IMG/VR virus record: IMGVR_UViG_3300045256_000050
Span: 62,001 to 126,000 of that record
Reading direction: 5' to 3' (one strand)
Length of the DNA stretch: 64,000 bases
The notes beneath the pieces are model-generated. The model was not told where the DNA came from. It ran no database searches and saw only the letters and a list, made by a program, of their open reading frames with translations. The stretch's first letter is position 1. Each line of letters opens with the position of its first letter. The position numbers and the translations under genes are program-made. Below, one piece after another: positions 13,700 to 56,488 of the stretch.

Positions 13700-14127
13700 C
13701 AACGAAACCGAAGTTCATCGGGTGCCAGTACCCGTTGATGAAGACGCCTCGGGGCATCATGGCCCAGAAGAACGGCGTTGACCAGATCAAGGCCGACATG
13801 CTCCAACTCCTGCTCACCAACCCCGGCGAGCGGGTGATGTTGGCTGACTACGGTGTGCCGTTGCGGAAGCTGATCTTCGAGCCGAACGACGTTGGGCTGG
13901 AGATTCAGGCCCGGAACATGATCGCCGAAGCTATTACTAAATGGGAGCCACGGGTTGTTCTGCAACAGGTTCAGGTGAGTTCGGTCGTCGATATCGGCGA
14001 CCTCGCCCCGGACGACCCCCGTGAAGACACGCCGCACGTCTTGTCGATCAAGATATTGTTCTACGACCCGCAGAACATTACGGAAGTGCAGGAATTGAAA
14101 CTCGAAGTGCCACTAGGGAGCGTCTAA
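13696..14127 (+). CDS. gp25: Baseplate wedge protein gp25-like
   Basis: LLLTNPGERVMLADYG...AITKWEPRV. Confidence 0.9.
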   Translation: MTTKPKFIGCQYPLMKTPRGIMAQKNGVDQIKADMLQLLLTNPGERVMLADYGVPLRKLIFEPNDVGLEIQARNMIAEAITKWEPRVVLQQVQVSSVVDIGDLAPDDPREDTPHVLSIKILFYDPQNITEVQELKLEVPLGSV

Positions 14128-15680: not shown

Positions 15681-15682
15681 GA

Positions 15683-18829: not shown

Positions 18830-19302
18830 AACTTGAATCAAGAGTAGATGTATACGGTCACGTCTTTGGCGTGATCGATTACAAAGACGGACGGAGCGAG
18901 AGGTTCGACTTCCCCAACACGATCCTTCGTGGTGGGCGTCGTGCCCTGGCCCTGGGCCTCGCCAATCAGGTCGGGGACGCCTTCGAGTTCTACGTCACCC
19001 GCATGATGTTCGGGGACGGCGGGACGTTCAACGGCGTGAAGAAGTTTGTGAACGCCGACCGGAATGGGTTGTTCGGCGTTACCCGGCTGTCGAAGCCGGT
19101 GATTGCAAACATCGACATCAACGTGCCGACGCAGGTCATCTTTACCTCGGTCATCACGTTCGACGAGGCGGTTGGCGTCGTCCTGAACGAGATGGCCTTG
19201 CAGATGGCGACCGGCGACTTGTACAGCATGGTGACGTTCCCGGACTTGAGCAAGACTGAGGAAATGCAGATCACCTGGAACTGGCACATCTCTTACAGCT
19301 AA
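18826..19302 (+). CDS. Tail fibre attachment / tail-collar-type protein
   Basis: NTILRGGRRALA...VTRMMFGDGG...VIFTSVI...LNEMAL pattern found at fibre N-termini; follows gp7-like gene. Confidence 0.55.
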   Translation: MKLESRVDVYGHVFGVIDYKDGRSERFDFPNTILRGGRRALALGLANQVGDAFEFYVTRMMFGDGGTFNGVKKFVNADRNGLFGVTRLSKPVIANIDINVPTQVIFTSVITFDEAVGVVLNEMALQMATGDLYSMVTFPDLSKTEEMQITWNWHISYS

Positions 19303-20704: not shown

Positions 20705-21490
20705 ATGCCTCGTATTGAGCTAATCACAGTCCCACTGTACAACCCGACTGACCCGTACCACTTTGAGTTCGACAACATCCCGTTGAAGAACATCTTGCGG
20801 CGGCAGAACCTCATCAATCTGTCGCTCGACAACGTGATCGAGCAGATTCGGGATGCCATCGGCACGCAGGGGAGCATGGCGAACCGGCTCAACCAGTCGA
20901 TCAACGCCGACGGTAGTCTGAAGACGGACGCCATTGACGAGGCACTTCACAGCGTTGAGGAACACGAAGACACGGTAGACTATGTTCGTATGCTCCGGTC
21001 CGAGTCCGACAAGCTGGCGTTGATCGCCGACGAGGCGACCAACACTTCTTTGGAAATTCAGCTTGACGACGACGGGGATGATGTCGTAACATTAGACAAT
21101 GGTCCGGCGAGACTCGTCCCCAGCAACACGGTGACGTGGAGCGTCGAGTCCCCGAACAAGATCAGTGCAAATCTGGCGTTCCCGGCCGAGGCTGCCCACA
21201 AGCATTACTACGACCAGGAACCAGTTCCCGCCGATCTCACCGAGCCGGACTACATTAACTACAAGGTAAACTCAGCGGCCACGCCGTTCGTCGAAGGCAC
21301 CCTGCGTGTCTACATCAACGGCGTGCGGTTGTCCGCCACAACTTCCATCTACGTCCCAGGCGCACTGGTAAACGACCCCTGGACGCTGATGACCTACACG
21401 CCCGACTTCGAGAACGGCACGTTCGCCCTTTCTACCGCCGTGTCCGAAGAGGACGTAGTAAGAATTGACTATGACATCTCGTACATCTAA
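20705..21490 (+). CDS. Putative virion structural (tail-associated) protein
   Basis: C-terminal GTLRVYINGVRL...VVRIDY beta-domain common in tail proteins; acidic. Confidence 0.6.
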   Translation: MPRIELITVPLYNPTDPYHFEFDNIPLKNILRRQNLINLSLDNVIEQIRDAIGTQGSMANRLNQSINADGSLKTDAIDEALHSVEEHEDTVDYVRMLRSESDKLALIADEATNTSLEIQLDDDGDDVVTLDNGPARLVPSNTVTWSVESPNKISANLAFPAEAAHKHYYDQEPVPADLTEPDYINYKVNSAATPFVEGTLRVYINGVRLSATTSIYVPGALVNDPWTLMTYTPDFENGTFALSTAVSEEDVVRIDYDISYI

Positions 21491-22046
21491 GAAAAAGGCA
21501 GAGGTAGTACGTCCCGAGTTCGGGTTCGTGATCCTCTGCCCGGAACGCAACCTCGGTGGGTTAAAGAACACCGTCAACTCGATCAAGAGCCACTTCCCGG
21601 AATGCTCCTACGTCTGCACCGTCGGCGACGACGTGCAGAAGGACGAGTTGGCCGAGATGATCGGGATTTGCAACACCGTCAAGGCCGGGAACACGATCAC
21701 GTCCCTCATCAACGTGGGGATGAAGCACTCGGACGCCGAGTGGAACATCATCGTCTTTTCCGGTAGCTGGCTCCGCACCAGCCTCATCAACAAGGCCAGG
21801 ACGTTCATCAAGAGCGACCGGGATGTGTTGTTCCCGGTGGTTGACTGGAAGACGAACTTCGTGGACGGCTCGATGAACGGCATATTCCTGCACCGCAAGA
21901 TGTTCGAGGACGCCGGTGAGTTCCCCGCCGGGGCGATGGAGAAGGCGGGCGTGAGCGACATCGAGATGGCGAAGCTGTTTTGGGCGGCTGAGGCCATCGA
22001 GAAGGGTGCGATCTTCAAAGCCATCGTGGGAATGCGAGTGTGTTAA
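21471..22046 (+). CDS. Degenerate GT-A (family 2-like) glycosyltransferase-fold protein
   Basis: FVILCPERN...LINVGMKHSDAEWNIIV resembles the GT2 N-terminal domain; no clear DxD. Confidence 0.45.
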   Translation: MTSRTSKKKAEVVRPEFGFVILCPERNLGGLKNTVNSIKSHFPECSYVCTVGDDVQKDELAEMIGICNTVKAGNTITSLINVGMKHSDAEWNIIVFSGSWLRTSLINKARTFIKSDRDVLFPVVDWKTNFVDGSMNGIFLHRKMFEDAGEFPAGAMEKAGVSDIEMAKLFWAAEAIEKGAIFKAIVGMRVC

Positions 22047-22556
22047 ATGCCAGTCCTGTCCGACGTTACCCGTGCCCGCCTCCTAGACGCCAACCAGAAC
22101 CCTCTTACGGAATGGCACGCAGTTTATAACCTAAAGCCGGAACTGTCGGGCGGGAACAGCATGTTCCTGGTGGACTTGGCCGTTGCCGCCCGGAACGACA
22201 GCTTCGGCTCGGCAATCGTCACCCGTGACCCGTTCAGCAACATGATGCTACTGGTGCAACGGTCCGGCGACAACCACCACAACTACTACCTGTTCAAGAA
22301 CTGTATCTTCCAGAGCTTCAATGCCCTGGATATTGCGGAAGGGGTTTGGTACGGGGAGACGACGTTCTACTGTCAGTTTTACGAGATTCACACGGGGGAC
22401 AGGCTCCAAATCATCCGGCCCATCAGAAGTCAACAATCACGGACCCAGGCTAATCCCGACACCGAGATTAGAAACAGGTTGCAAGACCTGGGGAGAAACC
22501 CGGATTGCGGCAGAGACTCTGATGGGCCGGTGGATTGGCTCAACAACGGCTTTTAG
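22047..22556 (+). CDS. Hypothetical protein ending in DWLNNGF
   Basis: 169-aa ORF abutting the previous stop. Confidence 0.65.
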   Translation: MPVLSDVTRARLLDANQNPLTEWHAVYNLKPELSGGNSMFLVDLAVAARNDSFGSAIVTRDPFSNMMLLVQRSGDNHHNYYLFKNCIFQSFNALDIAEGVWYGETTFYCQFYEIHTGDRLQIIRPIRSQQSRTQANPDTEIRNRLQDLGRNPDCGRDSDGPVDWLNNGF

Positions 22557-23092
22557 ATCAAGCCGTAGGTGAACGACCAGCGGTCATTCTCCTTATGTTT
22601 ACCCTGGTTCACTTCGTCCAGGTAGTTATACAACTCGTCCCAAGACCCGAACATGAAGTCCAGCGGGATGAACCCGTAGTACCACAGCGGGACGTATTCC
22701 TTGCCCTGCGGACACATCAACAGTGTGGGCTTCTTTTGGTTGCTGCTGTTGATGATCTCGTGGTGCGTGCCGGTCGTGGGCACCTTCCGGGGAAGGTACG
22801 AGATCACGATGTCGGCCCGGTCCACCATCTTCAGGTCTTTCTTCACGAACTGGCGGGCGATCCGCTGCATCGTGTCGAAGTCCTTCTCGGCCTGAGCTTT
22901 CGTGAGTGAAGGCACCCACTGCTGCTTCGGGTCGTCGAACGGGTCGAACAGATCGAGGCCGAACCGCTCGGTCAGCACCTTCTTCGGTTCGGTCCGCCAG
23001 TTGTGGCCGGACGTGTCGTGTTCAATCGGCCCGGACAGGTAGACTCGCTGTCCGGCCAAGTAACTTGTCTTTCCTTCCGTGGACACGAACAT
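22553..23092 (-). CDS. Nucleoside 2-deoxyribosyltransferase / nucleotide N-glycosidase-like protein
   Basis: VYLSGP, DLKMVDRADIVI and TGTHHEI...KKP motifs; GGAGG SD. Confidence 0.8.
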   Translation of the reverse strand: MFVSTEGKTSYLAGQRVYLSGPIEHDTSGHNWRTEPKKVLTERFGLDLFDPFDDPKQQWVPSLTKAQAEKDFDTMQRIARQFVKKDLKMVDRADIVISYLPRKVPTTGTHHEIINSSNQKKPTLLMCPQGKEYVPLWYYGFIPLDFMFGSWDELYNYLDEVNQGKHKENDRWSFTYGLI

Positions 23093-23141
23093 TCCTAGTC
23101 CTCCTTAACTTTCATAATCACAGTACCGAAACGAGGAAAAT

Positions 23142-23876
23142 ATGTCAAGCATCGACCCCCAGAAGTTGTTCGAGAACATTCAGGAACTCCTGGCGAAAGC
23201 CGAAATGCCGGAGCGGCACACCTTCTTTCAGATGAAAAACTTCATCGTCGGCAAGGAATGCACGGTACAAGGCCAGTTGTGGCAGATCACCCGTGAACTC
23301 CGTGCCCGGTCGGACTCCCTCCTGGCCCTCCACGACCAGATCGCCGACTCCCAGGATAGCATCGAATTGCTGAACATTGCAACTGAGCGGCTGCGGATTA
23401 ACCACAAATCCTCCGGCACGATGGGGAACGACGAACTGGACGAGCGGGAAAAGCAGGTCAAGTTGCGGAAACTGGACCGGGAGCGGGCTTCCCTGGAAAG
23501 AACCGTGGAAACCCTGAAGAATAAATCTAAATACCTTCTGGAAGAGATGGCTTACCTTTACAACGCCCACGAGACGTTGAGTAAGGTTCAGGCCATGAAG
23601 CCGCTGGATGACGTGCAGGCACAGCAGGAATACTGGAACGAAAAGCTCACCGAAGAACTCAATCTTCGCCTACTCCTCCGTAACCCGCTCGACAGCGATT
23701 TTGTAAAGACCATCCTGGCCCTCGAAGACACGTCGCCTGTCAAGAAGCAGATGGTCGAAATCCTCGGCAAAGTTCAGAAAAACATGCTCGAAGAACGTGA
23801 CCGGCAGTTGGCCCTCGCCGCCGACAAGCAGACCGGCCAGCACAAGGCTTTACTGAGAAAACAAGGTGGTAAGTAA
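23142..23876 (+). CDS. Hypothetical coiled-coil protein
   Basis: 244-aa ORF, GAGG SD, heptad-rich centre. Confidence 0.8.
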   Translation: MSSIDPQKLFENIQELLAKAEMPERHTFFQMKNFIVGKECTVQGQLWQITRELRARSDSLLALHDQIADSQDSIELLNIATERLRINHKSSGTMGNDELDEREKQVKLRKLDRERASLERTVETLKNKSKYLLEEMAYLYNAHETLSKVQAMKPLDDVQAQQEYWNEKLTEELNLRLLLRNPLDSDFVKTILALEDTSPVKKQMVEILGKVQKNMLEERDRQLALAADKQTGQHKALLRKQGGK

Positions 23877-24919
23877 TGGCTATCGACAGAATCTCCTCAC
23901 TGGATGAAGGTTACGCAACAGGGGATTTGTCCGTCTTCCCGACCGCCCTGGACGACAAGAACATTCTGTACACGGCCACGAACAACTCCAAGACTTCACT
24001 GAAGCAAACCCTGTCCTACAACGGCCAGATCGTCGTCGTGGACGACACGACCGGGTTCCCGGACCGGGGCATCATCCGCATCGGGTTCACCGGCGAGGGC
24101 GAGGGGAACTTCGAACTGATCGCCTACAACAAGAAGACGGGTAACACCTTCCAGCAGTTGAAGCGGGGGTTCGCCGGGTCCAAGCAGGGCGTATGGCGTC
24201 CGGGGCAGGCGTACATCACGAACAGCGTCGTGGCGGAACACCACAACGCCATCAAGGACGCCATCCTGAACATTGAGAAAGACCTGGGGACGAAGGAAGA
24301 CCCGGACCCGCTGTCGCTCAACGGCATTCTGAAACAGCAGGAAGTACGTTTCCTAACGCCGAAACCCCTGTTCCGGGCGTTCCCGACGAAGGGGCCACCC
24401 CCGCATCAGGTCCGGTTCCAGAACTTCACGACGGGGCACATCGTCCGCAACCTGTGGGACTTTGGCGACGGCGGTACGTCCCTGGAGAAGAACCCGGTCC
24501 ACACCTATCTGCAAGAGGGTGTGTACACGGTGAAGTTGAACATCATCACTTCGACGGGTGCCCAGGGGGTTGCGACGAAGACCGGCTACATCACTGTGGA
24601 CAAGGACGAGAACATTCCGTTCGTCTACGTTGACTCGCTGCTCAACCCGTACTCCGTGGAGACGGCCTCGGCGTTGACCGACGGCGGCAACCCGACGGAG
24701 CCGAAGACGTTCGTCTTCGTGGATCAGTCGGACGGCGACATCGTTCAGCGGAATTGGGTGTTCGGCGACGGACAGCAGTTCACTGAGAACGACCCGGACA
24801 TCCATACGATCTCCCACGTCTACGACAAGCCCGGAACGTATGACGTGACTCTGATCTTGATCTACAGCAACCGGCGGCTGAAGAAAGTGAATTTGTCTGA
24901 AGAACTGGTGGTTTTGTAA
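23876..24919 (+). CDS. PKD-domain virion/fibre protein, paralog 1
   Basis: Two WDFGDG / WVFGDG PKD motifs; N-terminal VAEHHNAIKDAI block. Confidence 0.85.
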   Translation: MAIDRISSLDEGYATGDLSVFPTALDDKNILYTATNNSKTSLKQTLSYNGQIVVVDDTTGFPDRGIIRIGFTGEGEGNFELIAYNKKTGNTFQQLKRGFAGSKQGVWRPGQAYITNSVVAEHHNAIKDAILNIEKDLGTKEDPDPLSLNGILKQQEVRFLTPKPLFRAFPTKGPPPHQVRFQNFTTGHIVRNLWDFGDGGTSLEKNPVHTYLQEGVYTVKLNIITSTGAQGVATKTGYITVDKDENIPFVYVDSLLNPYSVETASALTDGGNPTEPKTFVFVDQSDGDIVQRNWVFGDGQQFTENDPDIHTISHVYDKPGTYDVTLILIYSNRRLKKVNLSEELVVL

Positions 24920-27204
24920 TGACGATCCCTACAGCGAGTGACTACCCGGACGCCTTCGACTCGGACACTAACCTGTTCGCAGTTCATGACGGTCTGCGGG
25001 TCCGTCTTGCCGAAGATTACAACCCCGGCGATACCGAGATCACGGTGGAGGGCGACCTTCTCATCCTGTCTCGGTTCCCGCCGACGGGCATCATCACGCT
25101 CACCGAGCAGTGCAGCGACATCGACAAGCGGGCCATCTCGCTGTTCTACTCGAACATCGACACGGCCACGGGCGTCATCAGCGGCCTCGAAGTCCTGCCG
25201 ACGTTCGTAGATGTTCCGAAACTCAAGCGGATCACGAACGTCACGCAGAACGTCATGGCTCAGCACCACAACGCCCTGAAGGACGCCCTGATCGCTATCG
25301 AAGAGTTCATCGGCGTCAAGGGCACCGTGGACGACCTGCCGTTCGGGCCGACGATGGAAGGCCGGGTCAACTTCTTACGCAAGGTGGTTCTCATCCCCCG
25401 TGCGTGGTTCACCGCCGACAAGCGGACGGGCATCGTCCCGCTCGACATCGAGTTCCGTGACCTGAGCTTCCGCCTGGGTACTGACGGCACCGCCGGTCCC
25501 GTGACGATCTCCTGGGACTTCGGCGACAACACGACCAGCAACATCTCGCTCATCAGCGTCATCAGTGAAACCTCCGTAGTTCCAGAGGACGCCGAGAACG
25601 TGTTGGTTTACGACACGGACGGCGGGACGATCAAGAAGACCTACCTGCGGCCCGGCATCTTCGACGTGACCCTGACCGTCACGAACGACTTCGGCAGCGA
25701 CTCCTGCACCTTCCCGGCCTTCATCAAGGCTCGGGTGAAGGCACCGGACGAGGCCATCATCAAGTTCCAGAACGGCGAAGGGCAGACGATCACCCCAGGC
25801 GTGCCGGTCAACGGACCGTACACCGTGAACCCACGGGTGCGGGCACCGATCAACACCATCATCAATCTGTTCATCCCGGACGGAGAGAACCTGTCCACGC
25901 CGGGAATCAGCTTCGGCGGGGAACCGCTCGACGGCAGCGGCTCGCCGATTGACCCGATTGTGAACTACACCTGGAGTCTGGGTGACGACCTGAACCACCC
26001 GAACGCCTCCAGCACGAAGGCGTCTTACTCTATCGGCGGGTTGTACGACCTGAAGCTGCGGGTGGACACGGACTTCGGGGCTTACAGAATCACCACCTAC
26101 GAGAACTGCATCGACGTGGTGGAGAACGTGAACCTGTGGCTGTGGACGTTCGACACGGGCGTTACGGTCCGGGCCTACGAGTATGGGTTGATTAGCGAAA
26201 CATTCAAGCTCAACAGCAACTCGTCGCAGATCGTGTTGCGGGACGACAGCTTCTTGGACAACGTGCCGTCGGCCTCGCAGCAGAAGCGGGAGTTCAAGCG
26301 GAACACCGGCTTTGCTCCCCGTGGTACGCTGGAGTCGGGCCGTGGCGGCTCTGTGTTGCTTTATTGGGCGAGCGGCCGGTCTGGTTCCGACCCGATCAGT
26401 GCCGAGGAGATTCGGTTCGTTGAGTACACCGGGTTCAGCGACACCTACATCACCCGGTCCGAGGTTAGCCGCCCGTGGAATTGGGCGACGTTCAATTCCG
26501 CCGGGGCTGCGTTCTTCGTGTTCGGTGCCCCGACCACCGTGCCCTCGCCATCGACTTCGCCGACCAACCCGACGAAGACGATCCTCGACCTGACGTTCTT
26601 GACGACCACGGACGAAACGCTGACGGTGGACAACTTCAGCAACGGTGCCCAGGAATTGTTGAGTAACGTGGCCTCGTATGACGACGACGGCAACAGCATC
26701 TACGGTAACTTCAGCGTGTACCGGACGGCCTGGAAGGACAACACCGGGTACATCACCCGGAACTCGGGCATCGGCCCGTTCTTCCGCATCAAGAGCTTCT
26801 ACCGGACGGAGGGGACTGTGGGCAACCCGTTCCAGACGATCCGCAAGCTGACGGACATGCAGGGGCCGACGAAGACCGAGGGCCAGTTGACTAACTTGAG
26901 CCAGGGTGTGTACTTCTTCAACAACTCCGGGTCGATCTCGGCGTTCAGCGACACGAGCTTCACTTGGTCTACGGGCGGTCCTGGGTTTAACTCCGTGGCG
27001 TACCGGGCTTTGCAAGATACCGGCGTTCCGGGATACGATAATACATCGAACACGCTGCTGTGTACCTCGGACGGGGACAAGCGGGCGTACCTGAGCTTCG
27101 ACTACAGCGAGAACGTGTTCCTGAAGTTCTCTGAGACGGACCTAACATTCACCGCCCTGGGCGCACGGCCGAGCGGCGAGCAATGGATCATGGGAGTTTA
27201 CTAA
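24919..27204 (+). CDS. PKD-domain virion/fibre protein, paralog 2
   Basis: WDFGDN and WSLGDD PKD motifs; MAQHHNALKDAL block; beta-rich C-terminus. Confidence 0.85.
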   Translation: MTIPTASDYPDAFDSDTNLFAVHDGLRVRLAEDYNPGDTEITVEGDLLILSRFPPTGIITLTEQCSDIDKRAISLFYSNIDTATGVISGLEVLPTFVDVPKLKRITNVTQNVMAQHHNALKDALIAIEEFIGVKGTVDDLPFGPTMEGRVNFLRKVVLIPRAWFTADKRTGIVPLDIEFRDLSFRLGTDGTAGPVTISWDFGDNTTSNISLISVISETSVVPEDAENVLVYDTDGGTIKKTYLRPGIFDVTLTVTNDFGSDSCTFPAFIKARVKAPDEAIIKFQNGEGQTITPGVPVNGPYTVNPRVRAPINTIINLFIPDGENLSTPGISFGGEPLDGSGSPIDPIVNYTWSLGDDLNHPNASSTKASYSIGGLYDLKLRVDTDFGAYRITTYENCIDVVENVNLWLWTFDTGVTVRAYEYGLISETFKLNSNSSQIVLRDDSFLDNVPSASQQKREFKRNTGFAPRGTLESGRGGSVLLYWASGRSGSDPISAEEIRFVEYTGFSDTYITRSEVSRPWNWATFNSAGAAFFVFGAPTTVPSPSTSPTNPTKTILDLTFLTTTDETLTVDNFSNGAQELLSNVASYDDDGNSIYGNFSVYRTAWKDNTGYITRNSGIGPFFRIKSFYRTEGTVGNPFQTIRKLTDMQGPTKTEGQLTNLSQGVYFFNNSGSISAFSDTSFTWSTGGPGFNSVAYRALQDTGVPGYDNTSNTLLCTSDGDKRAYLSFDYSENVFLKFSETDLTFTALGARPSGEQWIMGVY

Positions 27205-27206
27205 AG

Positions 27207-29078: not shown

Positions 29079-29081
29079 ACT

Positions 29082-29987
29082 ATGCTCAACCTACCTATCG
29101 ACCTGACTCAATCCAAGAACACCTTGTTCTTGGGCATCGGGGGCGGCTTCGACATCTACGGGGCCGTCCCTTTGTTTGCGCAAAACCACAACGCCAACAC
29201 GAGACTCTTCTTCGCCAATGTCAACGCCTCGGTCAAGAGCGTGTTGAAGTTCCCCAGGGACGATCACCCGTGTCCCGAAGGCTTCCTGGCCGGGTGGCTG
29301 GAGAAGCAGGAATACAAAACCACCGTCTACGCCCTACCTCGTGCCGGTGTGATCCCAACCCGGAACATCCTGCACACCATCATGAAAGAACACGCCATTG
29401 ACACGATTGTGTGCGTGGACGGCGGGGTGGATTCACTGATGGTGGGCGACGAGGAAGGGGCCGGGACGATTCTGGAGGACTTCGTGACGATGCAGGCGGT
29501 GAGTGCCCTGCGTGTGGCGAAGGTTCTGGTCTGCCTGGGTTTCGGCACGGAGACGGACGAGGACGTGTGCCACAACCATGCGTTACAGAACATGGCGGCT
29601 CTGGCTGCCGACGGGGCGTTCTGGGGTTGTTCTTCACTGACGAAGGACGACCCGGAATACCAAGCCTATCGAGAAGTGTGCGAGTACGCATGGGCCGACG
29701 GGAGGCGTAAGAGCCACGTCCACACGAAAGTCATCTCGGCCGTCGAGGGGAAGTTCGGGAACGACTCTCTGTACTCGGACGTGGACCCGCAACTCGCCGG
29801 GAAGACGAACACAGTAAACTACATTAACCCGTTGATGCCGATCATGTGGTTCTACGATCTCGACAAGGTGCTGGCCCGTAACAAGCTGGCGAAGTTGTTC
29901 GAGAACACCAACCTCAGCACCGACGTGTTGATGTTGTACAGGTCTAACAAGTTACCACTGAGGGAGCGACAAGCTATTCCGCTATGA
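29082..29987 (+). CDS. DUF1152-like protein
   Basis: GIGGGFD and VDGGVDSLMVGDEEGAGTILED motifs. Confidence 0.75.
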   Translation: MLNLPIDLTQSKNTLFLGIGGGFDIYGAVPLFAQNHNANTRLFFANVNASVKSVLKFPRDDHPCPEGFLAGWLEKQEYKTTVYALPRAGVIPTRNILHTIMKEHAIDTIVCVDGGVDSLMVGDEEGAGTILEDFVTMQAVSALRVAKVLVCLGFGTETDEDVCHNHALQNMAALAADGAFWGCSSLTKDDPEYQAYREVCEYAWADGRRKSHVHTKVISAVEGKFGNDSLYSDVDPQLAGKTNTVNYINPLMPIMWFYDLDKVLARNKLAKLFENTNLSTDVLMLYRSNKLPLRERQAIPL

Positions 29988-30847
29988 GAATCCGAAAAGA
30001 CGAAAAGACTCGTAACAATTTCATTCGTGCAGGCGGGGTCTGGGTCCGGGACTTCACTAAACCCAACTCCATGCCCGTGACGCCGAACGCCCTGGTCCGT
30101 CCGGCCGACAAGCCGTTGATCGTGCAGAACGAGTTCCAGAACCGGGCGTTGAACATCGGCAACATCTGCGACGAGAAGTTGGTGTTCCCGAAGGTGGTCA
30201 TCATCTCCGACGGCTACTCGTTTGCCAAGCGGGTAGACTTCATCAACAGCCTGCCGAACGACGTGGCGGTCTTCGCCGTCAACCATGCGTTGAACAAGTG
30301 GCGGACGACCGGGTTCAAGAAGCCCGTAAACCTGTATGTGGTGAATAACCCGTACCCGGAGGCGACAAGCTACCTGCCGAGAAAGTCGAAATACTACCCG
30401 GCGTGCGTGGCGTCAATGCGGACCAATGCGAAGTTCCTGAAGGACTACAAGGGGACGACGTATGTGTACGAGCCGGTTCCCGAGGAAGGGTTCGGACAAA
30501 AGGGTGACAGTCTTTACTATGTTGATGACTACCGAAACCCGGTGTGTGCGGCGATTGGCCTCGCCTACCGGATGCGTGCCCAGAAGATCATGCTCGTCAG
30601 TTGCGACGAGTCATTCGGTGAGAAGAAGGACGGGGCTGAGGAATTACCGAACGGCCTCTATACCTATCCGCAGCAGTTGATGGCCCAGGAGTTGATCGAC
30701 GCCAACCTGTACTGGTTTACTAAGAAGAAGACCGGCGAGGCGAAGGCCGCAAACTACTCAGACGGCCCAGAAAACAAGCATGCTACATATATAACCCAAG
30801 ACGAGCAGGCATTGGCATTCTTTGCGGATGAAGATGAAGACGCCTAA
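29984..30847 (+). CDS. Maf / DUF115 (MptE-like) fold protein, possible glycosyltransferase
   Basis: VIISDGYS...VFAVNHAL and PVCAAIGLAYRMRAQKIMLVSCD motifs. Confidence 0.55.
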   Translation: MRIRKDEKTRNNFIRAGGVWVRDFTKPNSMPVTPNALVRPADKPLIVQNEFQNRALNIGNICDEKLVFPKVVIISDGYSFAKRVDFINSLPNDVAVFAVNHALNKWRTTGFKKPVNLYVVNNPYPEATSYLPRKSKYYPACVASMRTNAKFLKDYKGTTYVYEPVPEEGFGQKGDSLYYVDDYRNPVCAAIGLAYRMRAQKIMLVSCDESFGEKKDGAEELPNGLYTYPQQLMAQELIDANLYWFTKKKTGEAKAANYSDGPENKHATYITQDEQALAFFADEDEDA

Positions 30848-30911
30848 AGGATGTGCTGTGCGGGCCTGAATGAATGCAGTGCTTACACGGGTACATTCTT
30901 CGGAGGACTTA

Positions 30912-31244
30912 ATGAGTAACGAACGACCATCGTTTTCGCTACACGATTTCAAGAACTGGCTGTCCCAACAGAAGGATATGTCCGAGTTCTTCAACATCGA
31001 GAAACCCACCGCCTCGAAGGCAGAGGGCTTCATCGGGATGAGTGTGACCCCAAAGGTGGGGATGAAGAAGTTGCTTGAGAAGGCTCACGCCGACGACGGC
31101 GATGCGGAACAAATGGTTCACGAACTCGTCGAGGAAGGCGGCGTGATCGTTGACACGAAGGGCAAAGAACTCTTAATTGAGGTTGATTCGGGTTGTTTTT
31201 ACCTGCCCCGCTTCTGCGTCCGACTGGTTAAGGACGAGGAGTAA
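30912..31244 (+). CDS. Hypothetical protein
   Basis: ATG at 30912 after GGAGG; N-terminus contains DFKNWL. Confidence 0.75.
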   Translation: MSNERPSFSLHDFKNWLSQQKDMSEFFNIEKPTASKAEGFIGMSVTPKVGMKKLLEKAHADDGDAEQMVHELVEEGGVIVDTKGKELLIEVDSGCFYLPRFCVRLVKDEE

Positions 31245-32036
31245 CGCCTTCCACATGTCGTCCACCGAAACCCGGCTGATGCACGCCTGATCGCCGGTTT
31301 CGCAAACATCCGTGCAATACGTTAGCCCTGTCTTGCGGCTGTGACAGCCCAGACAGGGCAATTCTTTTGCCGTCACCGGCACCACGTTACTGTTGAACAC
31401 CCGAGTGTTCGGGGCCACGCTCCCGAAGAACACCACCGCCGGAGTCTCGACGGCCTGGGCGACGTGGAACGGGAACGAGTCTACCCCCACGAACGCCTTC
31501 GCATCTTTGATGATGGTCGCCAGTTCGCCGACCGTCGTCTTGTTCCTCACGTCAACGTGGCTCGGGACGAAGTGGTCGCCCTCGCCGCCCACGCACACGA
31601 TCTGGTAGCCCGCATTATACAACCGAAGGGCGAGTTCCCGCCACTCGTTCTTGCCCCACGCCCGGCCGACCCAGCCTTCCGAAACACCGGCGTGGACGAC
31701 GACGTAGTTCACCACTTCCGGCTTGTTCACCGGGTCGTTCTTGACGAACAGTTCGCAGTCCTCGACGGGAACCCCGGCCTTGTCGGCGTAGCACTTCAGG
31801 AAGTTCTCGCTCTGGCGGGCCTCGTAGGCGGCGTCCAGGTTGATGACGAGATCGAACTGTCGTTGTGGGTCCGGCTTGATGATGAAGTCCACGAACGGGT
31901 TGCCGTGGAGGGAGTGGTGGCACTCGGTAGCGAAGTAGATTCGGCAGTCCGGGTACTTCTTTTTGAGGGCGGGGCAGACGGCGGCGGCTACGAAAACGTC
32001 GCCGGTCGAACCCATTCGGTTGATGAGGATGTCCAT
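31173..32036 (-). CDS. Glycosyltransferase family 9 (heptosyltransferase-like)
   Basis: RMGSTGDV...KKKYPDCRIYF; FVGVDSFPFHVAQAVETPAVVFFG; C-terminal CxxC...C...C. Confidence 0.9.
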   Translation of the reverse strand: MDILINRMGSTGDVFVAAAVCPALKKKYPDCRIYFATECHHSLHGNPFVDFIIKPDPQRQFDLVINLDAAYEARQSENFLKCYADKAGVPVEDCELFVKNDPVNKPEVVNYVVVHAGVSEGWVGRAWGKNEWRELALRLYNAGYQIVCVGGEGDHFVPSHVDVRNKTTVGELATIIKDAKAFVGVDSFPFHVAQAVETPAVVFFGSVAPNTRVFNSNVVPVTAKELPCLGCHSRKTGLTYCTDVCETGDQACISRVSVDDMWKALLLVLNQSDAEAGQVKTTRINLN

Positions 32037-32404
32037 TACGATTCTTTCTTTCTGAGCATTGTCTTCACCACCTTACACCCGCTCGTGTTGGCCTTCGGGG
32101 CTTTGTGGATGTTGGTGAAGTGGATCATGGGGATTTCCCCCATCGGTAGATTAGTGAAACCACGGTCTTTTAGCCGCTGTCGAAGGTCGGCGTAGGAGTT
32201 GGCCGTCTCCAGGCGGGCCTCGTACATCATCTTATTTTCATTCAAGACCCGGCCGACTGCCATCTTCCACTGCGGCGGGAGTTCCAGTTCCTCCAGGCTC
32301 GCCAGCGGCGAGTTCACTTCCTTGTCCGTGTCCGCCTTGAAAGTGGTCACTATCTTGACCCCCTGTTTGGACCGACTCGCCAAGTAGAGATACAACTTTC
32401 GCAT
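32036..32404 (-). CDS. Hypothetical protein
   Basis: 122-aa ORF with GAGGAG SD, coupled to the GT9 gene. Confidence 0.75.
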   Translation of the reverse strand: MRKLYLYLASRSKQGVKIVTTFKADTDKEVNSPLASLEELELPPQWKMAVGRVLNENKMMYEARLETANSYADLRQRLKDRGFTNLPMGEIPMIHFTNIHKAPKANTSGCKVVKTMLRKKES

Positions 32405-32528
32405 TAAACAACTCCTCTAGTAGTATAGAAAGTAAATCGAAGGTGTACTTCCCGTCGGGTCCGCCGAACTGCTGGAAGAAGTCCTTCACGGTGACGGCGG
32501 CGAGTGCCGCTTTTTCTTGTTCATTCAT

Positions 32529-33185
32529 ATGATACCGTTCCCGAAATACGCCAAGATCAAAGACAACTACTGCGTGGCCTACCTGGGGCAGTGCAACGAG
32601 TACCTGTTGTTATTGAACTACTTCGTGCCCCGGCTGGAAGTGCTACACCCCGGCATCAATATCTATCTCTGCTGCCGTGACGAATATCTGCCAATTCTGA
32701 CCCACCCCCGGTCCTTCCCCATCTCCCTGCTCAAGCAGAAGAAAGAAGAACTCGTCTACGTCAAGGAGATCGTTTACGACGGGAACGGGCACCCCATCGA
32801 GAATTTCCTGACCGAGAGCGGGCTGACCAACGTCCGGGTGGACGTGACCCCGCCGCCAGTGACGACGAGGGCCGTGGTCTTGACTAAGGGCAACTTCCCG
32901 ACGACCGGCCTGAACACGCAGGAGACGGAGTGGCTGCTGATGAAGGCCCAATCGGAAGGGTTCCACCCGGAGGTAGACGTGCCGGTGGACAACGCAGGGT
33001 ACGTCCTGGGGGTGGAATGTTACGAAATGTACCGGGCCGGGTTCGCTGGGGTGCGGACGGCGTTGGTCGCTAACGGCGTTGGGACGGGGTTCTACAAAAA
33101 GTTGTTCCCCGAGTCGGAGATTTTAGAACTGGCGGGATATATAAAATCGAAGACGGGCAAAGTACCTAACACTCTTAGGAGATAA
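32529..33185 (+). CDS. Hypothetical protein, possibly a degenerate GT9-like fold
   Basis: LEVLHPGINIYLCC and YVLGVECYEMYRAGFAGVRT loosely echo GT9 motifs. Confidence 0.5.
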   Translation: MIPFPKYAKIKDNYCVAYLGQCNEYLLLLNYFVPRLEVLHPGINIYLCCRDEYLPILTHPRSFPISLLKQKKEELVYVKEIVYDGNGHPIENFLTESGLTNVRVDVTPPPVTTRAVVLTKGNFPTTGLNTQETEWLLMKAQSEGFHPEVDVPVDNAGYVLGVECYEMYRAGFAGVRTALVANGVGTGFYKKLFPESEILELAGYIKSKTGKVPNTLRR

Positions 33186-33190
33186 AGAAT

Positions 33191-33766
33191 ATGTCAGTAT
33201 TCAAGGTCAAGTTGAACAACGTCGGCCAGGGTCGTCTGGACATCGATCCGACCACGGGTGTTCCTTTTGCTACGTCGAACCAGCGTAGCATCTACGTCGC
33301 TGGTCCGGGCCGCAAGTACCGGAAGCTGCGTGACGGTGAAACCTTCACCGACAACAACTACTGGAAGCAGTTCACTGCCGAGATCGCTGGCTACGAAGCC
33401 GCTTTCATCGAGGTTGTGAGCGACGACGGTTCGGTTTACTCGGACATCCCGGAAGAGAACACGTTCGCTATTGGTCACACGTTCACGAACCTCTCGACGA
33501 GCTTCAGTGACAACGTTATCGACTTCGTTGACACCTACGGCGGTCCGGCAACGTTCCTCCAGGTCACGAACACGACTGGCTCGACCCGTTCGATCCAGGG
33601 CGAAGTCAACGGCGACACGAACGTCATCTTCACCCTCGCTGACGGCGAAACCCAGGTCTTCAACACCGGCGATGTTCGCATCACCATGTTGCGGCTCAAG
33701 GGCGTTGGCGGCACCGACGGTGACGCTCAGGTTATCGGCTCCGTCCGGTCCCTGTCCCAGAGCTAA
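33191..33766 (+). CDS. Putative abundant virion protein (beta-rich)
   Basis: Uses GGT/GCT/CGT/GTT codons as the capsid gene does; TATATAA upstream and terminator downstream. Confidence 0.6.
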   Translation: MSVFKVKLNNVGQGRLDIDPTTGVPFATSNQRSIYVAGPGRKYRKLRDGETFTDNNYWKQFTAEIAGYEAAFIEVVSDDGSVYSDIPEENTFAIGHTFTNLSTSFSDNVIDFVDTYGGPATFLQVTNTTGSTRSIQGEVNGDTNVIFTLADGETQVFNTGDVRITMLRLKGVGGTDGDAQVIGSVRSLSQS

Positions 33767-33786
33767 GTTTGACAAGACAAACAACG

Positions 33787-33819
33787 AACACCCGGCAGAA
33801 ATGCCGGGTGTTTTCTTTT
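33787..33819 (+). terminator. Rho-independent terminator
   Basis: AACACCCGGCA-GAAA-TGCCGGGTGTT followed by TTCTTTT. Confidence 0.9.
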
Positions 33820-33826
33820 ATACGGC

Positions 33827-34066
33827 ATGAACGCCGGTTACTTTTACTGCCCGTACATCCCGTTGCAAGATTCACCCACGGTTCTTGCGCCGGAGGGGAC
33901 GGAGTTCCCACAGGATGACGCCAGAACCATTAACGACATCGTGAACGGTCATGAGCGGTGGCGGTACGACGAGGACGACTACGACCCGTACTTCGATCCG
34001 GCCTCCGTGTTCTACATGGGTGGCAGTCTGCCCATCGACTTTGACTGGCTAAAGGAAGGATTCTGA
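33827..34066 (+). CDS. Small protein with gp23 C-terminal motif and DWLKEGF end
   Basis: MNAGYFYCPYIPL matches the gp23-family AG.FYCPY.PL motif. Confidence 0.65.
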   Translation: MNAGYFYCPYIPLQDSPTVLAPEGTEFPQDDARTINDIVNGHERWRYDEDDYDPYFDPASVFYMGGSLPIDFDWLKEGF

Positions 34067-35046
34067 TGAAGATTGTTACCCGACGGGTAGAGAACCGCAG
34101 GCCCGACAAGCTCCAGCGAATCATGTCCCTGGGCGACTTCGCCGAGAAGCGTAACCAAGTGCTGATTCAGCGGAACGTCGGCGGGTTGGGCGACATCTTC
34201 ATGCACCGGATGATGTTCGAAGATTTCAAGCGGGTCATGCCCGACGCCAAGATTCACTTCGCTTGCCCCCGTCAGTACCACGACGCCGTGACTGACCACC
34301 CGTTCGTGGACAAGGTACTGGACTCGGCGACGGTGGATCGGTTTCAGTACATCGTCTCGTACAACACCACCACCGCCTGTGGCCGGTACGAACTCCGTAT
34401 GTTCCCCTATTCCGGCTTGCACCGGAGCGACATCTGGGCGCAACACTGCGGGGTTCACCTGACGAACCACAACATGCACATACGCATGACGGCCGAGGAA
34501 GTCGCCTGGGGGCGAGCGAAGTTGGAGGAGAACCGGGACCGGCCGGGGCCGATTGTCCTGATGTCGCCGGTGAGTGCGATGGAGAACAAGAACCTGCTCT
34601 ACCACCAGACGGAGGGGACGGTGAAGGGGCTTTGGGAGCGGGGGAATTGTGTGATCGGACTGCACTACAACCCGCTCATGCACTTCACCAAGTTAAACGC
34701 CCCGTGTATCTACAAGCTCTCGGTTCGGCAGTGGATGAGCGTGATTGCGGCGGCGGATTACGTCGTGAGCGTGGACACGGCGGCGTTCCACTGTGCAGGC
34801 GGGATGGGGAAGCCGCTGACGGGCATCTTTACTTTCGCCGACGGGAAGGTGTACGGGCGGTATTACAAGGGGTTCGAGTTGGTTCAACGGCACCGGGACG
34901 ACGGGGATTGGGACTGCGGGCCGTGTTACGATTGGGGCCGTTGCACGAAGACGAAGGCAAACCCGAAGCCGTGCCTGACCGAGATCACTTCGGACATGAT
35001 TCTGAAGGCAACTGACAAAATGTTTGCGAAACACTCATCTAAATAA
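34066..35046 (+). CDS. Glycosyltransferase family 9 (heptosyltransferase-like)
   Basis: GGLGDI...PDAKIHFAC; VVSVDTAAFHCAGGMGKPLTGIF; C-terminal CxPC...C...C. Confidence 0.9.
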   Translation: MKIVTRRVENRRPDKLQRIMSLGDFAEKRNQVLIQRNVGGLGDIFMHRMMFEDFKRVMPDAKIHFACPRQYHDAVTDHPFVDKVLDSATVDRFQYIVSYNTTTACGRYELRMFPYSGLHRSDIWAQHCGVHLTNHNMHIRMTAEEVAWGRAKLEENRDRPGPIVLMSPVSAMENKNLLYHQTEGTVKGLWERGNCVIGLHYNPLMHFTKLNAPCIYKLSVRQWMSVIAAADYVVSVDTAAFHCAGGMGKPLTGIFTFADGKVYGRYYKGFELVQRHRDDGDWDCGPCYDWGRCTKTKANPKPCLTEITSDMILKATDKMFAKHSSK

Positions 35047-35292: not shown

Positions 35293-35297
35293 AAGAA

Positions 35298-56424: not shown

Positions 56425-56488
56425 ATACAGAGAAATAGGGTGTTTGTTAATACCTAACTCCAGGTAACAGTCTACAGGAGTTTCATTT

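What the first reader, a model, noticed from the sequence alone, without database searches (positions are those of the whole stretch)
21471..35046. Glycosylation-type gene cluster interleaved with fibre and virion genes
Two clear GT9 (heptosyltransferase-like) genes, a degenerate GT9-like gene, a GT2-like gene, a Maf/DUF115-like gene and a DUF1152 gene sit among PKD fibre genes and a putative abundant virion protein. Known: GT9 enzymes use ADP-heptose for LPS cores, Maf proteins glycosylate flagellin, and virion glycosylation is documented in some mycobacteriophages. Inference: the phage glycosylates its own virion proteins or remodels host surface glycans. No nucleotide-sugar synthesis genes are in this window.
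Basis: partly seen in the sequence, partly recalled or inferred. Interest (0 to 1): 0.62.

Follow-up and report, generated by a model that had tools for sequence, protein, structure and literature searches.

The report
Huge-phage tail-fibre glycosylation gene module
A very large uncultured phage from hot-spring mats carries, wired into its tail-fibre genes, a conserved set of sugar-transferring enzymes plus a swappable slot for extra ones, which most likely coats a virion surface protein with sugars, a trait so far shown only in mycobacteriophages.

Summary
The observation largely holds. The window is part of a 245-kb fragment (CheckV 48% complete) of a huge myovirus. Right after the baseplate genes lie a GT-A-fold protein (21471-22046), three PKD fibre genes, DUF1152, a Maf-type transferase (29984-30847) and two GT9 genes (31173-32036 on the minus strand; 34066-35046).

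- **Corrections.** The "GT2-like" gene is GT-A by fold only: it has no Pfam hit and no acidic DXD site. The "degenerate GT9" (32517-33185) is weakly supported (hhalign 61%). DUF1152 is a strain-specific insert of unknown function.
- **New.** The order baseplate, GT-A-like, PKD fibres, Maf-like, 33191 protein, GT9-like is kept across about 20 related large-phage contigs down to 35-40% identity. Between two conserved genes sits a variable minus-strand slot. It is empty in some relatives and in others holds GT9, GT2-GT9 fusions, UDP-sugar dehydrogenase, aldehyde dehydrogenase or TnpB.
- **Catalytic residues.** The Asp residues aligned with E. coli WaaC D13/D261 are invariant in both GT9 families. 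Both carry a Cys4 cluster placed like the iron finger of the protein heptosyltransferase TibC.
- **Reading.** Cytoplasmic glycosylation of a fibre or virion-surface protein using host sugar donors (confidence 0.45). LPS remodelling, DNA glycosylation and non-catalytic roles remain open.

The parts
13696..19302 (+). Baseplate wedge and tail genes (gp25-like 13696-14127, gp6-like 14127-15680, 1050-aa tail protein 15677-18829, 18826-19302) that precede the module
   Evidence: PHROG baseplate wedge and tail hits. The same order is seen in L001, L121 and L122.
21471..22046 (+). It has no canonical DXD. It belongs to a family conserved in huge phages and always lies between the baseplate and the PKD fibres.
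   Evidence: No Pfam hit. 54 homologues on contigs up to 691 kb. Model pLDDT 90.8. Foldseek and VIA top hits are all GT-A glycosyltransferases, Z 18.1. The site after beta4 is acidic in only 0-2% of members.
22553..23092 (-). Nucleoside 2-deoxyribosyltransferase-like gene, on the minus strand inside the fibre module
   Evidence: PF05014 33.2 bits and PF15891 31.2 bits. 58-64% identical in L001, L016 and L018.
23142..23876 (+). Conserved 244-aa charged protein ahead of the fibres; possible fibre assembly or connector protein
   Evidence: Weak phrog_1409 hit. Conserved in L001, L011, L016 and L018.
23876..29078 (+). Three paralogous fibre genes (23876-24919, 24919-27204, 27183-29078). The first two have PKD domains and all three share an N-terminal region.
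   Evidence: PKD_4 88.5 and 54.7 bits. Cross-hits between paralogues. Conserved in nearly all relatives.
29082..29987 (+). DUF1152 protein. It is an accessory insert between the last fibre gene and the Maf-like gene, and its function is unknown.
   Evidence: PF06626 55.3 bits. Found only in the nearest relatives, at 61% identity, and in run X7. L009 has a GIY-YIG homing endonuclease at this position.
29984..30847 (+). Maf-type (MptE-like / sialyltransferase-like fold) transferase. Its start overlaps the DUF1152 stop codon.
   Evidence: PF01973 22.4 bits, below cut-off. 8 of 13 family members hit it. Model pLDDT 90.9. 5mu5 Maf Foldseek E 3e-7 and VIA Z 21.6 over residues 193-514. Invariant SDG, NNPY, DDYRN and CD motifs.
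30870..31244 (+). Conserved 124-aa acidic protein; last gene of the plus-strand fibre-Maf unit and left border of the variable slot
   Evidence: 29-90% identical in 15 loci.
31173..32036 (-). GT9 glycosyltransferase; cargo gene of the variable slot
   Evidence: PF01075 54.8 bits. Family profile against WaaF 39.4 bits and TibC 23.5 bits. G12/D13, D186 and H191 invariant, with a Cys cluster at C228/C231/C245/C252. Present in only some relatives.
32036..32404 (-). Conserved basic 122-aa protein; first gene of the minus-strand unit and right border of the variable slot
   Evidence: Present in all 16 loci with enough flank. No family hit.
32517..33185 (+). About 200-aa protein family, possibly a reduced GT-B/GT9-like remnant. 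The likely true start is 32529.
   Evidence: At least 128 homologues, none with a Pfam domain. hhalign against the GT9-like family gives 61%, E 8e-5, with GVE aligned to the VDT motif. Lost or truncated in L001, L016 and L018.
33191..33766 (+). Conserved 191-aa Ser/Thr-rich (19%) protein with a conserved N-terminal half and a variable C-terminal half. It is a candidate acceptor or virion-surface protein.
   Evidence: Present in all relatives at 33-78% identity. Atlas places it only in viral clusters, with weak beta-sandwich likenesses. No PHROG or Pfam hit.
33786..33813 (.). Strong bidirectional intrinsic terminator hairpin after the 33191 gene
   Evidence: 12-bp stem, 7 G-C pairs, followed by a T run.
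34066..35046 (+). Divergent GT9-like glycosyltransferase, a core member of the module, with a C-terminal Cys4 cluster
   Evidence: PF01075 24.8 bits. Profile against WaaC 27.5 bits over both lobes. hhalign against the other GT9 family 98%. D43, K175, D237, H242 and C287/C293/C303 are invariant and C284 nearly so. 44-92% identical in 17 loci.

Best explanation
This is a conserved late-gene module of a clade of very large myoviruses that most likely glycosylates a virion surface protein in the host cytoplasm before or during tail-fibre assembly.

- **Core parts.** A GT-A-fold protein just after the baseplate genes; three PKD fibre proteins; a Maf-type transferase coupled to the last fibre gene; a small conserved Ser/Thr-rich protein (33191-33766); and a divergent GT9 enzyme (34066-35046), possibly helped by a reduced GT-B-like partner (32517-33185).
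- **Variable slot.** A minus-strand slot between two conserved small genes carries interchangeable extra enzymes. In this genome it holds one GT9. In relatives it holds GT2-GT9 fusions, further GT9s, a UDP-sugar dehydrogenase or an aldehyde dehydrogenase. These would extend or vary the glycan from strain to strain.
- **Donors.** They would come mainly from the host. ADP-heptose for the GT9s is inferred from the family. A CMP-ulosonic acid for the Maf-type enzyme is inferred from the fold.

**Shown:** gene identities, folds, conserved catalytic-position residues, synteny, slot variability, and absence of membrane segments.

**Inferred:** that the acceptor is a protein, which protein it is (fibres or the 33191 product), the donors, and the biological pay-off (masking or tuning of the adsorption apparatus).
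For: - **Placement and coupling.** The genes sit directly after the tape-measure and baseplate genes, on the same strand as the fibres. Junctions overlap or nearly abut (29078/29082, 29984-29987).
- **Synteny.** The order is kept in a 595-kb phage (L001) and 17 IMG/VR loci at 33-92% identity. In more distant contigs the order baseplate, GT-A-like, PKD fibres, MptE-like persists (L121, L122).
- **Maf-type fold.** VIA Z 21.6 to the flagellin glycosyltransferase Maf, well above HPPK at 14.2, with invariant polar motifs.
- **GT9 residues.** The residues aligned to WaaC D13 and D261 are invariant in both phage GT9 families.
- **Not LPS orthologues.** Scores are far below the WaaC, WaaF and WaaQ equivalog cut-offs.
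- **Cys4 cluster.** Both GT9 families have one 12-14 residues after the shared C-lobe block, where TibC has its iron finger at C339/C342/C358/C370.
- **Slot content.** In relatives the slot holds sugar-related genes. Co-occurring strain variants diverge by about 12-14% exactly over 30.8-32.4 kb, while the flanks assemble cleanly.
- **No DNA-modification route found.** No hydroxymethylase, TET/JBP or C5-methylase in 245 kb.
- **Solubility.** All transferase-like proteins lack membrane segments.
- **Precedent.** Phage-encoded transferases next to structural genes glycosylate mycobacteriophage capsid and tail proteins (Freeman et al. 2023, as cited in PMC12619734).
Against: - No acceptor, donor or activity is demonstrated.
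- The phage is uncultured and no RNA runs were found.
- GT9 is classically an LPS inner-core family, and the core GT9-like protein is basic (net +10). That charge would suit an anionic lipid or a nucleic-acid acceptor.
- The GT-A-like protein lacks the canonical DXD and may be inactive.
- The Maf-like protein lacks the flanking domains that Maf uses with flagellin, and it stays below the Pfam cut-off.
- The fibre proteins show no long Ser/Thr-rich tracts apart from two short patches in 24919-27204.
- No CMP-sugar or ADP-heptose synthesis genes were found, although the genome is only about 48% complete.
- The enzyme-acceptor complex test could not be run.
Confidence: 0.45

Rival explanations
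1. Host envelope remodelling. The GT9 enzymes, and perhaps the Maf-type and GT-A-like proteins, add sugars to the host LPS inner core or another envelope glycan during infection. This could block superinfection or stop progeny from sticking to debris.
For: The best sequence matches of both GT9 families are the LPS heptosyltransferases WaaF and WaaC. The 34066 protein is basic. GT9 genes in huge phages are usually read as LPS auxiliary genes (PMC10747093). The slot contents resemble polysaccharide clusters.
Against: Scores are far below every LPS equivalog cut-off. Tight, long-conserved linkage to fibre genes and late-operon coupling is not expected for an early or host-directed function. There is no flippase, Wzy/Wzx, GtrA/B or any membrane protein in the module. 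The Cys4 cluster is not a feature of WaaC or WaaF as aligned here.
Confidence: 0.2
2. DNA hypermodification. The GT-B enzymes attach heptose, Kdo or other sugars to modified bases of the phage genome, as shown for other phage glycosyltransferases.
For: Phage GT-B enzymes can put bulky sugars such as Kdo or heptose on 5hmC (bioRxiv 10.1101/2023.12.21.572611). A nucleoside 2-deoxyribosyltransferase-like gene sits in the module. The 34066 protein has net charge +10. Replication genes follow a few kb downstream.
Against: No thymidylate-synthase-type hydroxymethylase, TET/JBP dioxygenase or C5 methyltransferase was found in the 245 kb held, though the genome is incomplete and the TET search had no positive control. 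The module is embedded in tail genes, not in nucleotide-metabolism genes. A Maf-type fold has no DNA precedent.
Confidence: 0.08
3. Non-catalytic roles. Some or all of the transferase-fold proteins are fibre assembly factors or virion components that keep the fold but not the chemistry. They might, for example, be sugar-binding adhesins or chaperones.
For: The GT-A-like family lacks the DXD. The 32517 family is a shrunken, barely recognisable GT-B-like protein. Both keep fixed positions relative to the fibres.
Against: The Maf-like and both GT9 families keep invariant polar or acidic residues at catalytic-type positions across 40-50% sequence divergence. Slot cargo includes intact GT2-GT9 fusions and sugar dehydrogenases, which makes sense only if chemistry is done.
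Confidence: 0.12

Closest known systems
Mycobacteriophage virion glycosylation (phage-encoded glycosyltransferases next to structural genes; Freeman et al. 2023, as cited in PMC12619734)
   Same: Phage-encoded soluble glycosyltransferases sit inside the structural gene block, and the presumed targets are virion surface proteins.
   Different: The enzyme families differ: GT9, Maf-type and a DXD-less GT-A here. The host type differs (57% GC huge myovirus from hot-spring mats). The genes are linked to baseplate and fibre genes rather than to capsid and tail tube. There is a variable cargo slot. Nothing has been shown experimentally here.
Bacterial autotransporter heptosyltransferases (TibC/AAH, BAHT family; PMC4358343)
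   Same: GT9-type C-lobe similarity (TibC 23.5 bits; TIGR04414 hit). A four-cysteine cluster follows the C-lobe at a position like the TibC iron finger. Both are soluble enzymes, and TibC acts on a protein acceptor.
   Different: The phage proteins lack the N-terminal beta-barrel; they begin with the G-D motif at residues 12-13 and 42-43. The score is far below the family cut-off (20.8 against 200). The Cys spacing differs. No autotransporter-like acceptor is present.
LPS heptosyltransferases WaaC/WaaF/WaaQ (CAZy GT9)
   Same: Pfam GT9 membership. Both lobes align. The residues aligned with WaaC D13 and D261 are conserved.
   Different: Equivalog cut-offs are missed by a wide margin. The phage proteins have an extra Cys4 cluster. 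The genomic context is tail fibres, not core-oligosaccharide genes.
Maf flagellin glycosyltransferases (PDB 5mu5) and GT42-type sialyltransferases
   Same: The whole phage protein superposes on Maf residues 193-514 (Z 21.6). Sialyltransferases follow at Z about 8. It shows weak Pfam MptE-like similarity.
   Different: At 287 aa against 632 aa, it lacks the terminal domains of Maf. No flagellin or CMP-nonulosonate genes are nearby. It stays below the Pfam cut-off.

Membership tests
CAZy GT9 / Pfam PF01075 (gene 31173-32036, minus strand) | Profile score above the curated cut-off | tested here: met
   54.8 bits against a cut-off of 22. The family profile hits WaaF at 39.4 bits, E 4e-9.
CAZy GT9 / Pfam PF01075 (gene 34066-35046) | Profile score above the curated cut-off, with both GT-B lobes alignable to a solved GT9 | tested here: met
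   24.8 bits against 22, so marginal. The family profile hits WaaC at 27.5 bits in two stretches, covering WaaC residues 2-57 and 238-292. hhalign against the other phage GT9 family gives 98% over 248 columns.
CAZy GT9 | Acidic residues at the positions of WaaC D13 and D261. Their catalytic role is taken from my own knowledge of E. coli heptosyltransferase I. | tested here: met
   D43 and D237 are invariant in 14 sequences. D13 and D186 are invariant in the 31173 subfamily.
LPS heptosyltransferase I/II/III orthologues (NCBIfam equivalogs) | Score above the equivalog cut-off | tested here: not met
   Best scores are 53.5, 43.8 and 38.9 bits against cut-offs of 170, 185 and 135.
CAZy GT9 | Use of ADP-heptose as donor | not testable with these tools
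   No assay is possible. No ADP-heptose pathway genes (SIS_2) were found in the 245 kb held.
BAHT (TibC/AAH) protein heptosyltransferases | TIGR04414 equivalog score and N-terminal beta-barrel | tested here: not met
   20.8 bits against a cut-off of 200. The phage proteins start with the G-D motif at residues 12-13 or 42-43, leaving no room for a 97-residue barrel.
BAHT (TibC/AAH) protein heptosyltransferases | Four-cysteine metal finger inserted after the C-lobe | tested here: inconclusive
   CxxC-x13-C-x6-C is invariant in the 31173 subfamily. CxxC-x5-C-x9-C is conserved in the 34066 family, with C287/C293/C303 invariant and C284 nearly so. The first Cys lies 12 residues after the end of the TibC-aligned block, against 10 in TibC. 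HMMER did not align the clusters, and metal binding is untested.
Maf / MptE-like (PF01973) | Pfam score above the cut-off | tested here: not met
   22.4 bits against 34.6. 8 of 13 family members hit at E <= 0.01, best E 3.9e-5.
Maf glycosyltransferase | Fold of the central catalytic domain | tested here: met
   Model pLDDT 90.9. 5mu5 gives Foldseek E 3.1e-7 and VIA Z 21.6, rmsd 4.4, 246 residues aligned (model 2-283 to Maf 193-514). The next hit is HPPK at Z 14.2.
Maf glycosyltransferase | Flanking N- and C-terminal domains, and linkage to flagellin and CMP-nonulosonate genes | tested here: not met
   287 aa against 632 aa. No CTP_transf_3 in the genome fragment. The neighbours are fibre genes.
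GT2 (gene 21471-22046) | Pfam GT2 profile match | tested here: not met
   No hit at E <= 5. A PF00535 search of the genome does not find it. hhalign against phage GT2 domains gives 0.4%.
GT-A fold glycosyltransferases (gene 21471-22046) | GT-A fold | tested here: met
   pLDDT 90.8. VIA Z 18.1 to WrtF, with 168 residues aligned at rmsd 2.9. All 50 listed entries are GT-A glycosyltransferases.
GT-A fold glycosyltransferases (gene 21471-22046) | DXD metal and nucleotide-sugar motif after strand beta4 | tested here: not met
   Positions 96-99 read F-[A/S]-G-S, with 0-2% acidic residues in 48 members. The position was assigned from the model's secondary structure, not from a residue-level superposition.
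GT9-like remnant (gene 32517-33185) | Detectable homology to GT9 | tested here: inconclusive
   hhalign 34% with 12 sequences and 61% (E 8e-5) with 62 sequences, in the same register. No Pfam or PDB hit. The Atlas model is poor.
DUF1152 (PF06626) | Pfam score above the cut-off | tested here: met
   55.3 bits against 27. Among the control genomes only Sulfolobus has it. No papers mention it.

The most novel reading that the evidence does not exclude
The phage uses the two universal LPS inner-core donors of its Gram-negative host to build an inner-core-like glycan on its own fibre or surface protein. CMP-Kdo would serve the Maf/sialyltransferase-fold enzyme and ADP-heptose the GT9 enzymes. The hypervariable minus-strand slot then diversifies this glycan between strains, giving a protein-linked, phage-encoded counterpart of O-antigen variation on the virion.
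Probability: 0.12. Interest if true: 0.85.

Novelty: new variant of a known kind. Interest (0 to 1): 0.55.

Why it matters
Virion glycosylation by phage-encoded enzymes has so far been shown only in mycobacteriophages.

This conserved module is linked to tail fibres, uses different enzyme families (GT9, Maf-type, an atypical GT-A) and has a plug-in slot for extra sugar enzymes. It occurs across a widespread clade of huge environmental phages. If it does glycosylate the virion, sugar coating of the adsorption apparatus would be an old and diversifying trait of large phages. That would bear on host range, on how virions behave in mats and sediments, and on how 'auxiliary metabolic' LPS genes in viromes are annotated.

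It also supplies defined, clonable enzyme-acceptor candidates for testing protein heptosylation outside the autotransporter systems.

Tried and rejected
- **Nucleotide search against phage records:** no match. tblastn of the best GT9 against phage records: no match.
- **Single-sequence PDB searches:** for 21465, 32517 and the Maf-like protein these gave nothing useful. The haemoglobin-protease hit is spurious. Family profiles of 21465, the Maf-like family and 32517 against PDB sequences also gave nothing.
- **hhalign of the 21465 family against phage GT2 domains:** 0.4%. The GT-A assignment therefore rests on fold alone.
- **Alternative genetic code:** 36301-36717 and 36727-37191 are in one frame, separated by a TGA. 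I considered recoding and rejected it. The genome has only two tRNAs and no suppressor. A Shine-Dalgarno sequence plus ATG follows the TGA. The second ORF is a fragment of a capsid paralogue. No other code was used.
- **Archaeal virus idea:** the Volactin and DUF1152 Pfam hits suggested it. I dropped it because the relatives are huge-phage records and the baseplate genes are T4-type.
- **Atlas search for 32517:** no usable hit.
- **Host inference from cellular GT9 homologues:** inconclusive. The best hits are MAG contigs (Neisseriaceae, Pirellulales) that may themselves be phage-derived.
- **Expression:** no RNA runs hold the locus.

Full report
**What the window is.** The window is bases 62001-126000 of a single 244,986-bp viral contig. 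IMG/VR classes it as linear, and CheckV estimates 48% completeness. GC content is about 57%. The genome fragment has two tRNAs and no suppressor tRNA, and ORFs are dense under code 11. The closest named records are metagenomic 'uncultured phage' genomes of 595 kb and 485 kb. Public runs that hold the locus are hot-spring and microbial-mat metagenomes. Diverged relatives occur in soil and bioreactor sludge. No RNA runs were found.

**Gene content of the flagged region.** Upstream lie a tape-measure gene (3559-9084) and T4-type baseplate wedge genes (13696-18829). The gene order then runs as follows.

| Coordinates | Strand | Product |
|---|---|---|
| 21471-22046 | + | No Pfam hit; GT-A fold |
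| 22047-22556 | + | Unknown |
| 22553-23092 | - | Nucleoside 2-deoxyribosyltransferase-like |
| 23142-23876 | + | Unknown, charged |
| 23876-24919, 24919-27204, 27183-29078 | + | Three paralogous fibre genes, the first two with PKD domains |
| 29082-29987 | + | DUF1152 |
| 29984-30847 | + | MptE-like, 22.4 bits (below cut-off) |
| 30870-31244 | + | Conserved, unknown |
| 31173-32036 | - | GT9, 54.8 bits |
| 32036-32404 | - | Conserved, basic, unknown |
| 32517-33185 | + | Unknown family |
| 33191-33766 | + | Unknown, followed by a strong terminator at 33786-33813 |
| 33827-34066 | + | Short ORF |
| 34066-35046 | + | GT9, 24.8 bits |
| 35050-35292 | + | Short ORF |
| 35289-36308 | + | Actin-like protein |

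The plus-strand genes abut or overlap, which fits one late transcription unit running from the fibres through the Maf-like gene.

**The two GT9 genes.**
- The minus-strand gene is a clear GT9. Its subfamily profile hits WaaF at 39.4 bits and TibC at 23.5 bits.
- The 34066 gene is divergent, but its 14-member family profile hits WaaC in both lobes. It also aligns with the other phage GT9 family at 98% hhalign probability over 248 columns.
- The residues aligned with WaaC D13 and D261 are invariant in both families: D43/D237 in one and D13/D186 in the other.
- Neither gene comes near the NCBIfam equivalog cut-offs for LPS heptosyltransferases I, II or III.
- Both carry a conserved four-cysteine cluster just after the C-lobe. 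TibC, a protein heptosyltransferase, has an iron finger there, formed by C339, C342, C358 and C370 (PMC4358343). The first cysteine lies 12 residues past the shared aligned block here, against 10 in TibC. This is a positional likeness, not an alignment. The phage proteins also lack TibC's N-terminal barrel.

**The Maf-like gene.** Pfam support is sub-threshold, although 8 of 13 family members hit PF01973. A model built on 13 homologues has pLDDT 90.9. Its best match is the Maf glycosyltransferase of Magnetospirillum (5mu5), with Foldseek E 3e-7 and VIA Z 21.6 over 246 residues, covering Maf residues 193-514. Archaeal HPPK follows at Z 14.2, SteA at 11 and sialyltransferases at about 8. Invariant SDG, NNPY, DDYRN and CD motifs suggest a live active site. 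The protein is only the central domain of Maf.

**The 'GT2-like' gene.** It has no Pfam or NCBIfam hit, and hhalign against phage GT2 domains gives nothing. The word search found 54 homologues without any Pfam domain, on contigs up to 691 kb. The model (pLDDT 90.8) is a GT-A fold: VIA Z 18.1 to the fucosyltransferase WrtF, and all 50 listed entries are GT-A glycosyltransferases. However, the site after strand beta4, where GT-A enzymes carry DXD, reads F-[A/S]-G-S in 47 of 48 members. The fold is confirmed; canonical chemistry is doubtful.

**The 'degenerate GT9' gene.** The 32517 family has at least 128 members of about 200 aa, none with a Pfam domain. hhalign against the GT9-like family gives 34% with a shallow alignment and 61% (E 8e-5) with a deeper one, in the same register. 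An invariant G-V-E lies opposite the V-D-T motif. The gene is lost or truncated in L001, L016 and L018. I treat it as a possible reduced GT-B relative, and perhaps an accessory subunit. This is not established.

**DUF1152.** The Pfam match is solid. The gene occurs only in the nearest relatives, and at lower identity (61%) than its neighbours (about 90%). A related phage has a GIY-YIG homing endonuclease at the same spot. No literature mentions the family. Only its location ties it to glycosylation.

**Synteny and the variable slot.** tblastn and blastp of the window's proteins against L001 and 17 IMG/VR loci show a conserved block: fibres, Maf-like, the 30870 protein, a slot, the 32036 protein on the minus strand, the 32517 protein, the 33191 protein, GT9-like, the 35050 protein, and the actin-like protein. 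The slot is empty in L011 and L016-L020. Elsewhere it holds minus-strand cargo:
- this genome's GT9;
- GT2-GT9 fusion proteins of about 575 aa;
- a second GT9 subfamily;
- a UDP-glucose/GDP-mannose dehydrogenase;
- aldehyde dehydrogenases;
- a TnpB gene.

In more distant contigs that carry the GT-A-like family at 40-46% identity, the order baseplate hub, gp25, wedge, GT-A-like, PKD fibres, MptE-like is again seen (L121, L122).

In the source sample, Logan contigs cover the flanks cleanly. They break into co-occurring variants about 12-14% apart exactly over 30.8-32.4 kb. That fits a strain-variable locus, though contigs cannot rank abundance.

**The rest of the genome.** The 245 kb hold further glycan genes:
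- a 541-aa GT9 protein at C1:55422-57047;
- a TPR protein with a weak GT9 match at C1:193322-194980;
- a minus-strand trio of epimerase/dehydratase, methyltransferase and weak GT9-like at about C1:221.1-223.6 kb;
- a GT2 at about C1:228.9-229.7 kb.

No NTP_transferase, CTP_transf_3 or SIS_2 genes were found. Nor were a thymidylate-synthase-type hydroxymethylase, TET/JBP or a C5 methyltransferase. These absences are weak evidence because the genome is incomplete, and the TET search had no positive control.

**Interpretation.** The strongest fact is the long-conserved physical linkage of transferase-fold genes to the fibre genes, in a late, same-strand, coupled arrangement. Added to this are enzyme types whose known relatives act on proteins (Maf; the TibC-like feature of the GT9s), and soluble products without membrane segments. 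I therefore favour glycosylation of a virion surface protein. The three fibre proteins and the conserved Ser/Thr-rich 33191 product are the candidate acceptors. The 33191 protein has a conserved N-terminal half and a variable C-terminal half. Donors would come from the host. The slot would diversify the glycan.

This reading is an inference. LPS-core remodelling, DNA glycosylation (phage GT-B enzymes can attach Kdo or heptose to 5hmC) and non-catalytic roles for the DXD-less and shrunken members all remain open.

**Comparison with what is known.** The nearest functional precedent is mycobacteriophage virion glycosylation, as cited in PMC12619734. That paper also notes several core glycosyltransferase groups in another lineage of large aquatic phages, without assigning targets. 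A wastewater huge-phage study reads a phage heptosyltransferase as an LPS auxiliary gene (PMC10747093). I found no description of a module linked to tail fibres that combines Maf-type and GT9 enzymes with a variable slot. I rate it a new variant of a known kind, unproven.

Noticed in passing
window 35289-36308 (+): An actin-like gene matches Pfam Volactin over its full length (230.9 bits) and is 57-96% identical in all relatives. In L009 the gene is 708 aa and carries an intein (Hint + LAGLIDADG); the L011 and L018 genes are of similar length (716 and 709 aa). A phage-borne member of the haloarchaeal volactin family, always next to the GT9-like gene, seems undescribed.
   Followed up: partly
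window 36727-37191 (+) and 33827-34066 (+); true capsid gene at window 63111 to beyond 64000: Two fragments of a major-capsid (Gp23) paralogue flank the GT9-like-actin block. The first matches capsid residues 304-429 (47% identity) and the second matches residues 426-448 (65%). Their order on the genome is inverted. They are absent from the relatives examined; a faint Gp23-like 82-aa ORF lies near homing endonucleases in L121.
   Followed up: partly
window 22553-23092 (-): A nucleoside 2-deoxyribosyltransferase-like gene lies on the opposite strand inside the fibre module. It is 58-64% identical in distant relatives. Its role (nucleotide salvage, base modification or something else) is unknown.
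   Followed up: no
G000:C1:221134-223638 (-), about 228.9-229.7 kb (+), 55422-57047 (-), 193322-194980 (-): There are further glycan genes outside the window: an epimerase/dehydratase, methyltransferase and weak GT9-like trio; a GT2; a 541-aa GT9 protein; and a TPR-repeat protein with a weak GT9 match, an architecture that recalls protein O-GlcNAc transferases.
   Followed up: partly
window 37863-38363 (+): A 166-aa protein made of two tandem copies of an approximately 80-aa domain is 73-81% identical in the closer relatives (L008-L014; 40-53% in L001 and L016-L021). It lies downstream of the actin-like gene (directly adjacent in L009, separated by other ORFs here and in several relatives) and has no Pfam hit. 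It could be an adaptor for the filament.
   Followed up: no
window 33786-33822: Several contigs in three runs match only the terminator hairpin and diverge on both sides (loose ends at 33779/33787 and 33822). The hairpin may therefore be a repeated element shared between different genomic contexts or phages.
   Followed up: no
L012:6816-7961 (+); L009:1321-2286 (+); L017:12879-15179 (+): Relatives carry mobile or extra genes at the same junctions: a TnpB (IS605 OrfB) in the slot, a GIY-YIG homing endonuclease where DUF1152 sits here, and a GT2-methyltransferase fusion downstream of the actin gene.
   Followed up: partly
L039 (Neisseriaceae MAG contig), L040-L042 (Pirellulales MAG contigs): The closest 'cellular' homologues of the slot GT9 (34-40% identity) lie on MAG contigs. 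One of these shares at least five other genes with this phage, including a subtilase at 57% identity. The others have tandem GT9 genes next to a methyltransferase that is 48-53% identical to a phage gene. These contigs may be mis-binned phages or hints to the host.
   Followed up: partly
window 36301-36717 (+): A 138-aa protein with the only clear transmembrane segment of the region (residues 9-27). It is present in the nearest relative only, and it overlaps the end of the actin-like gene.
   Followed up: no
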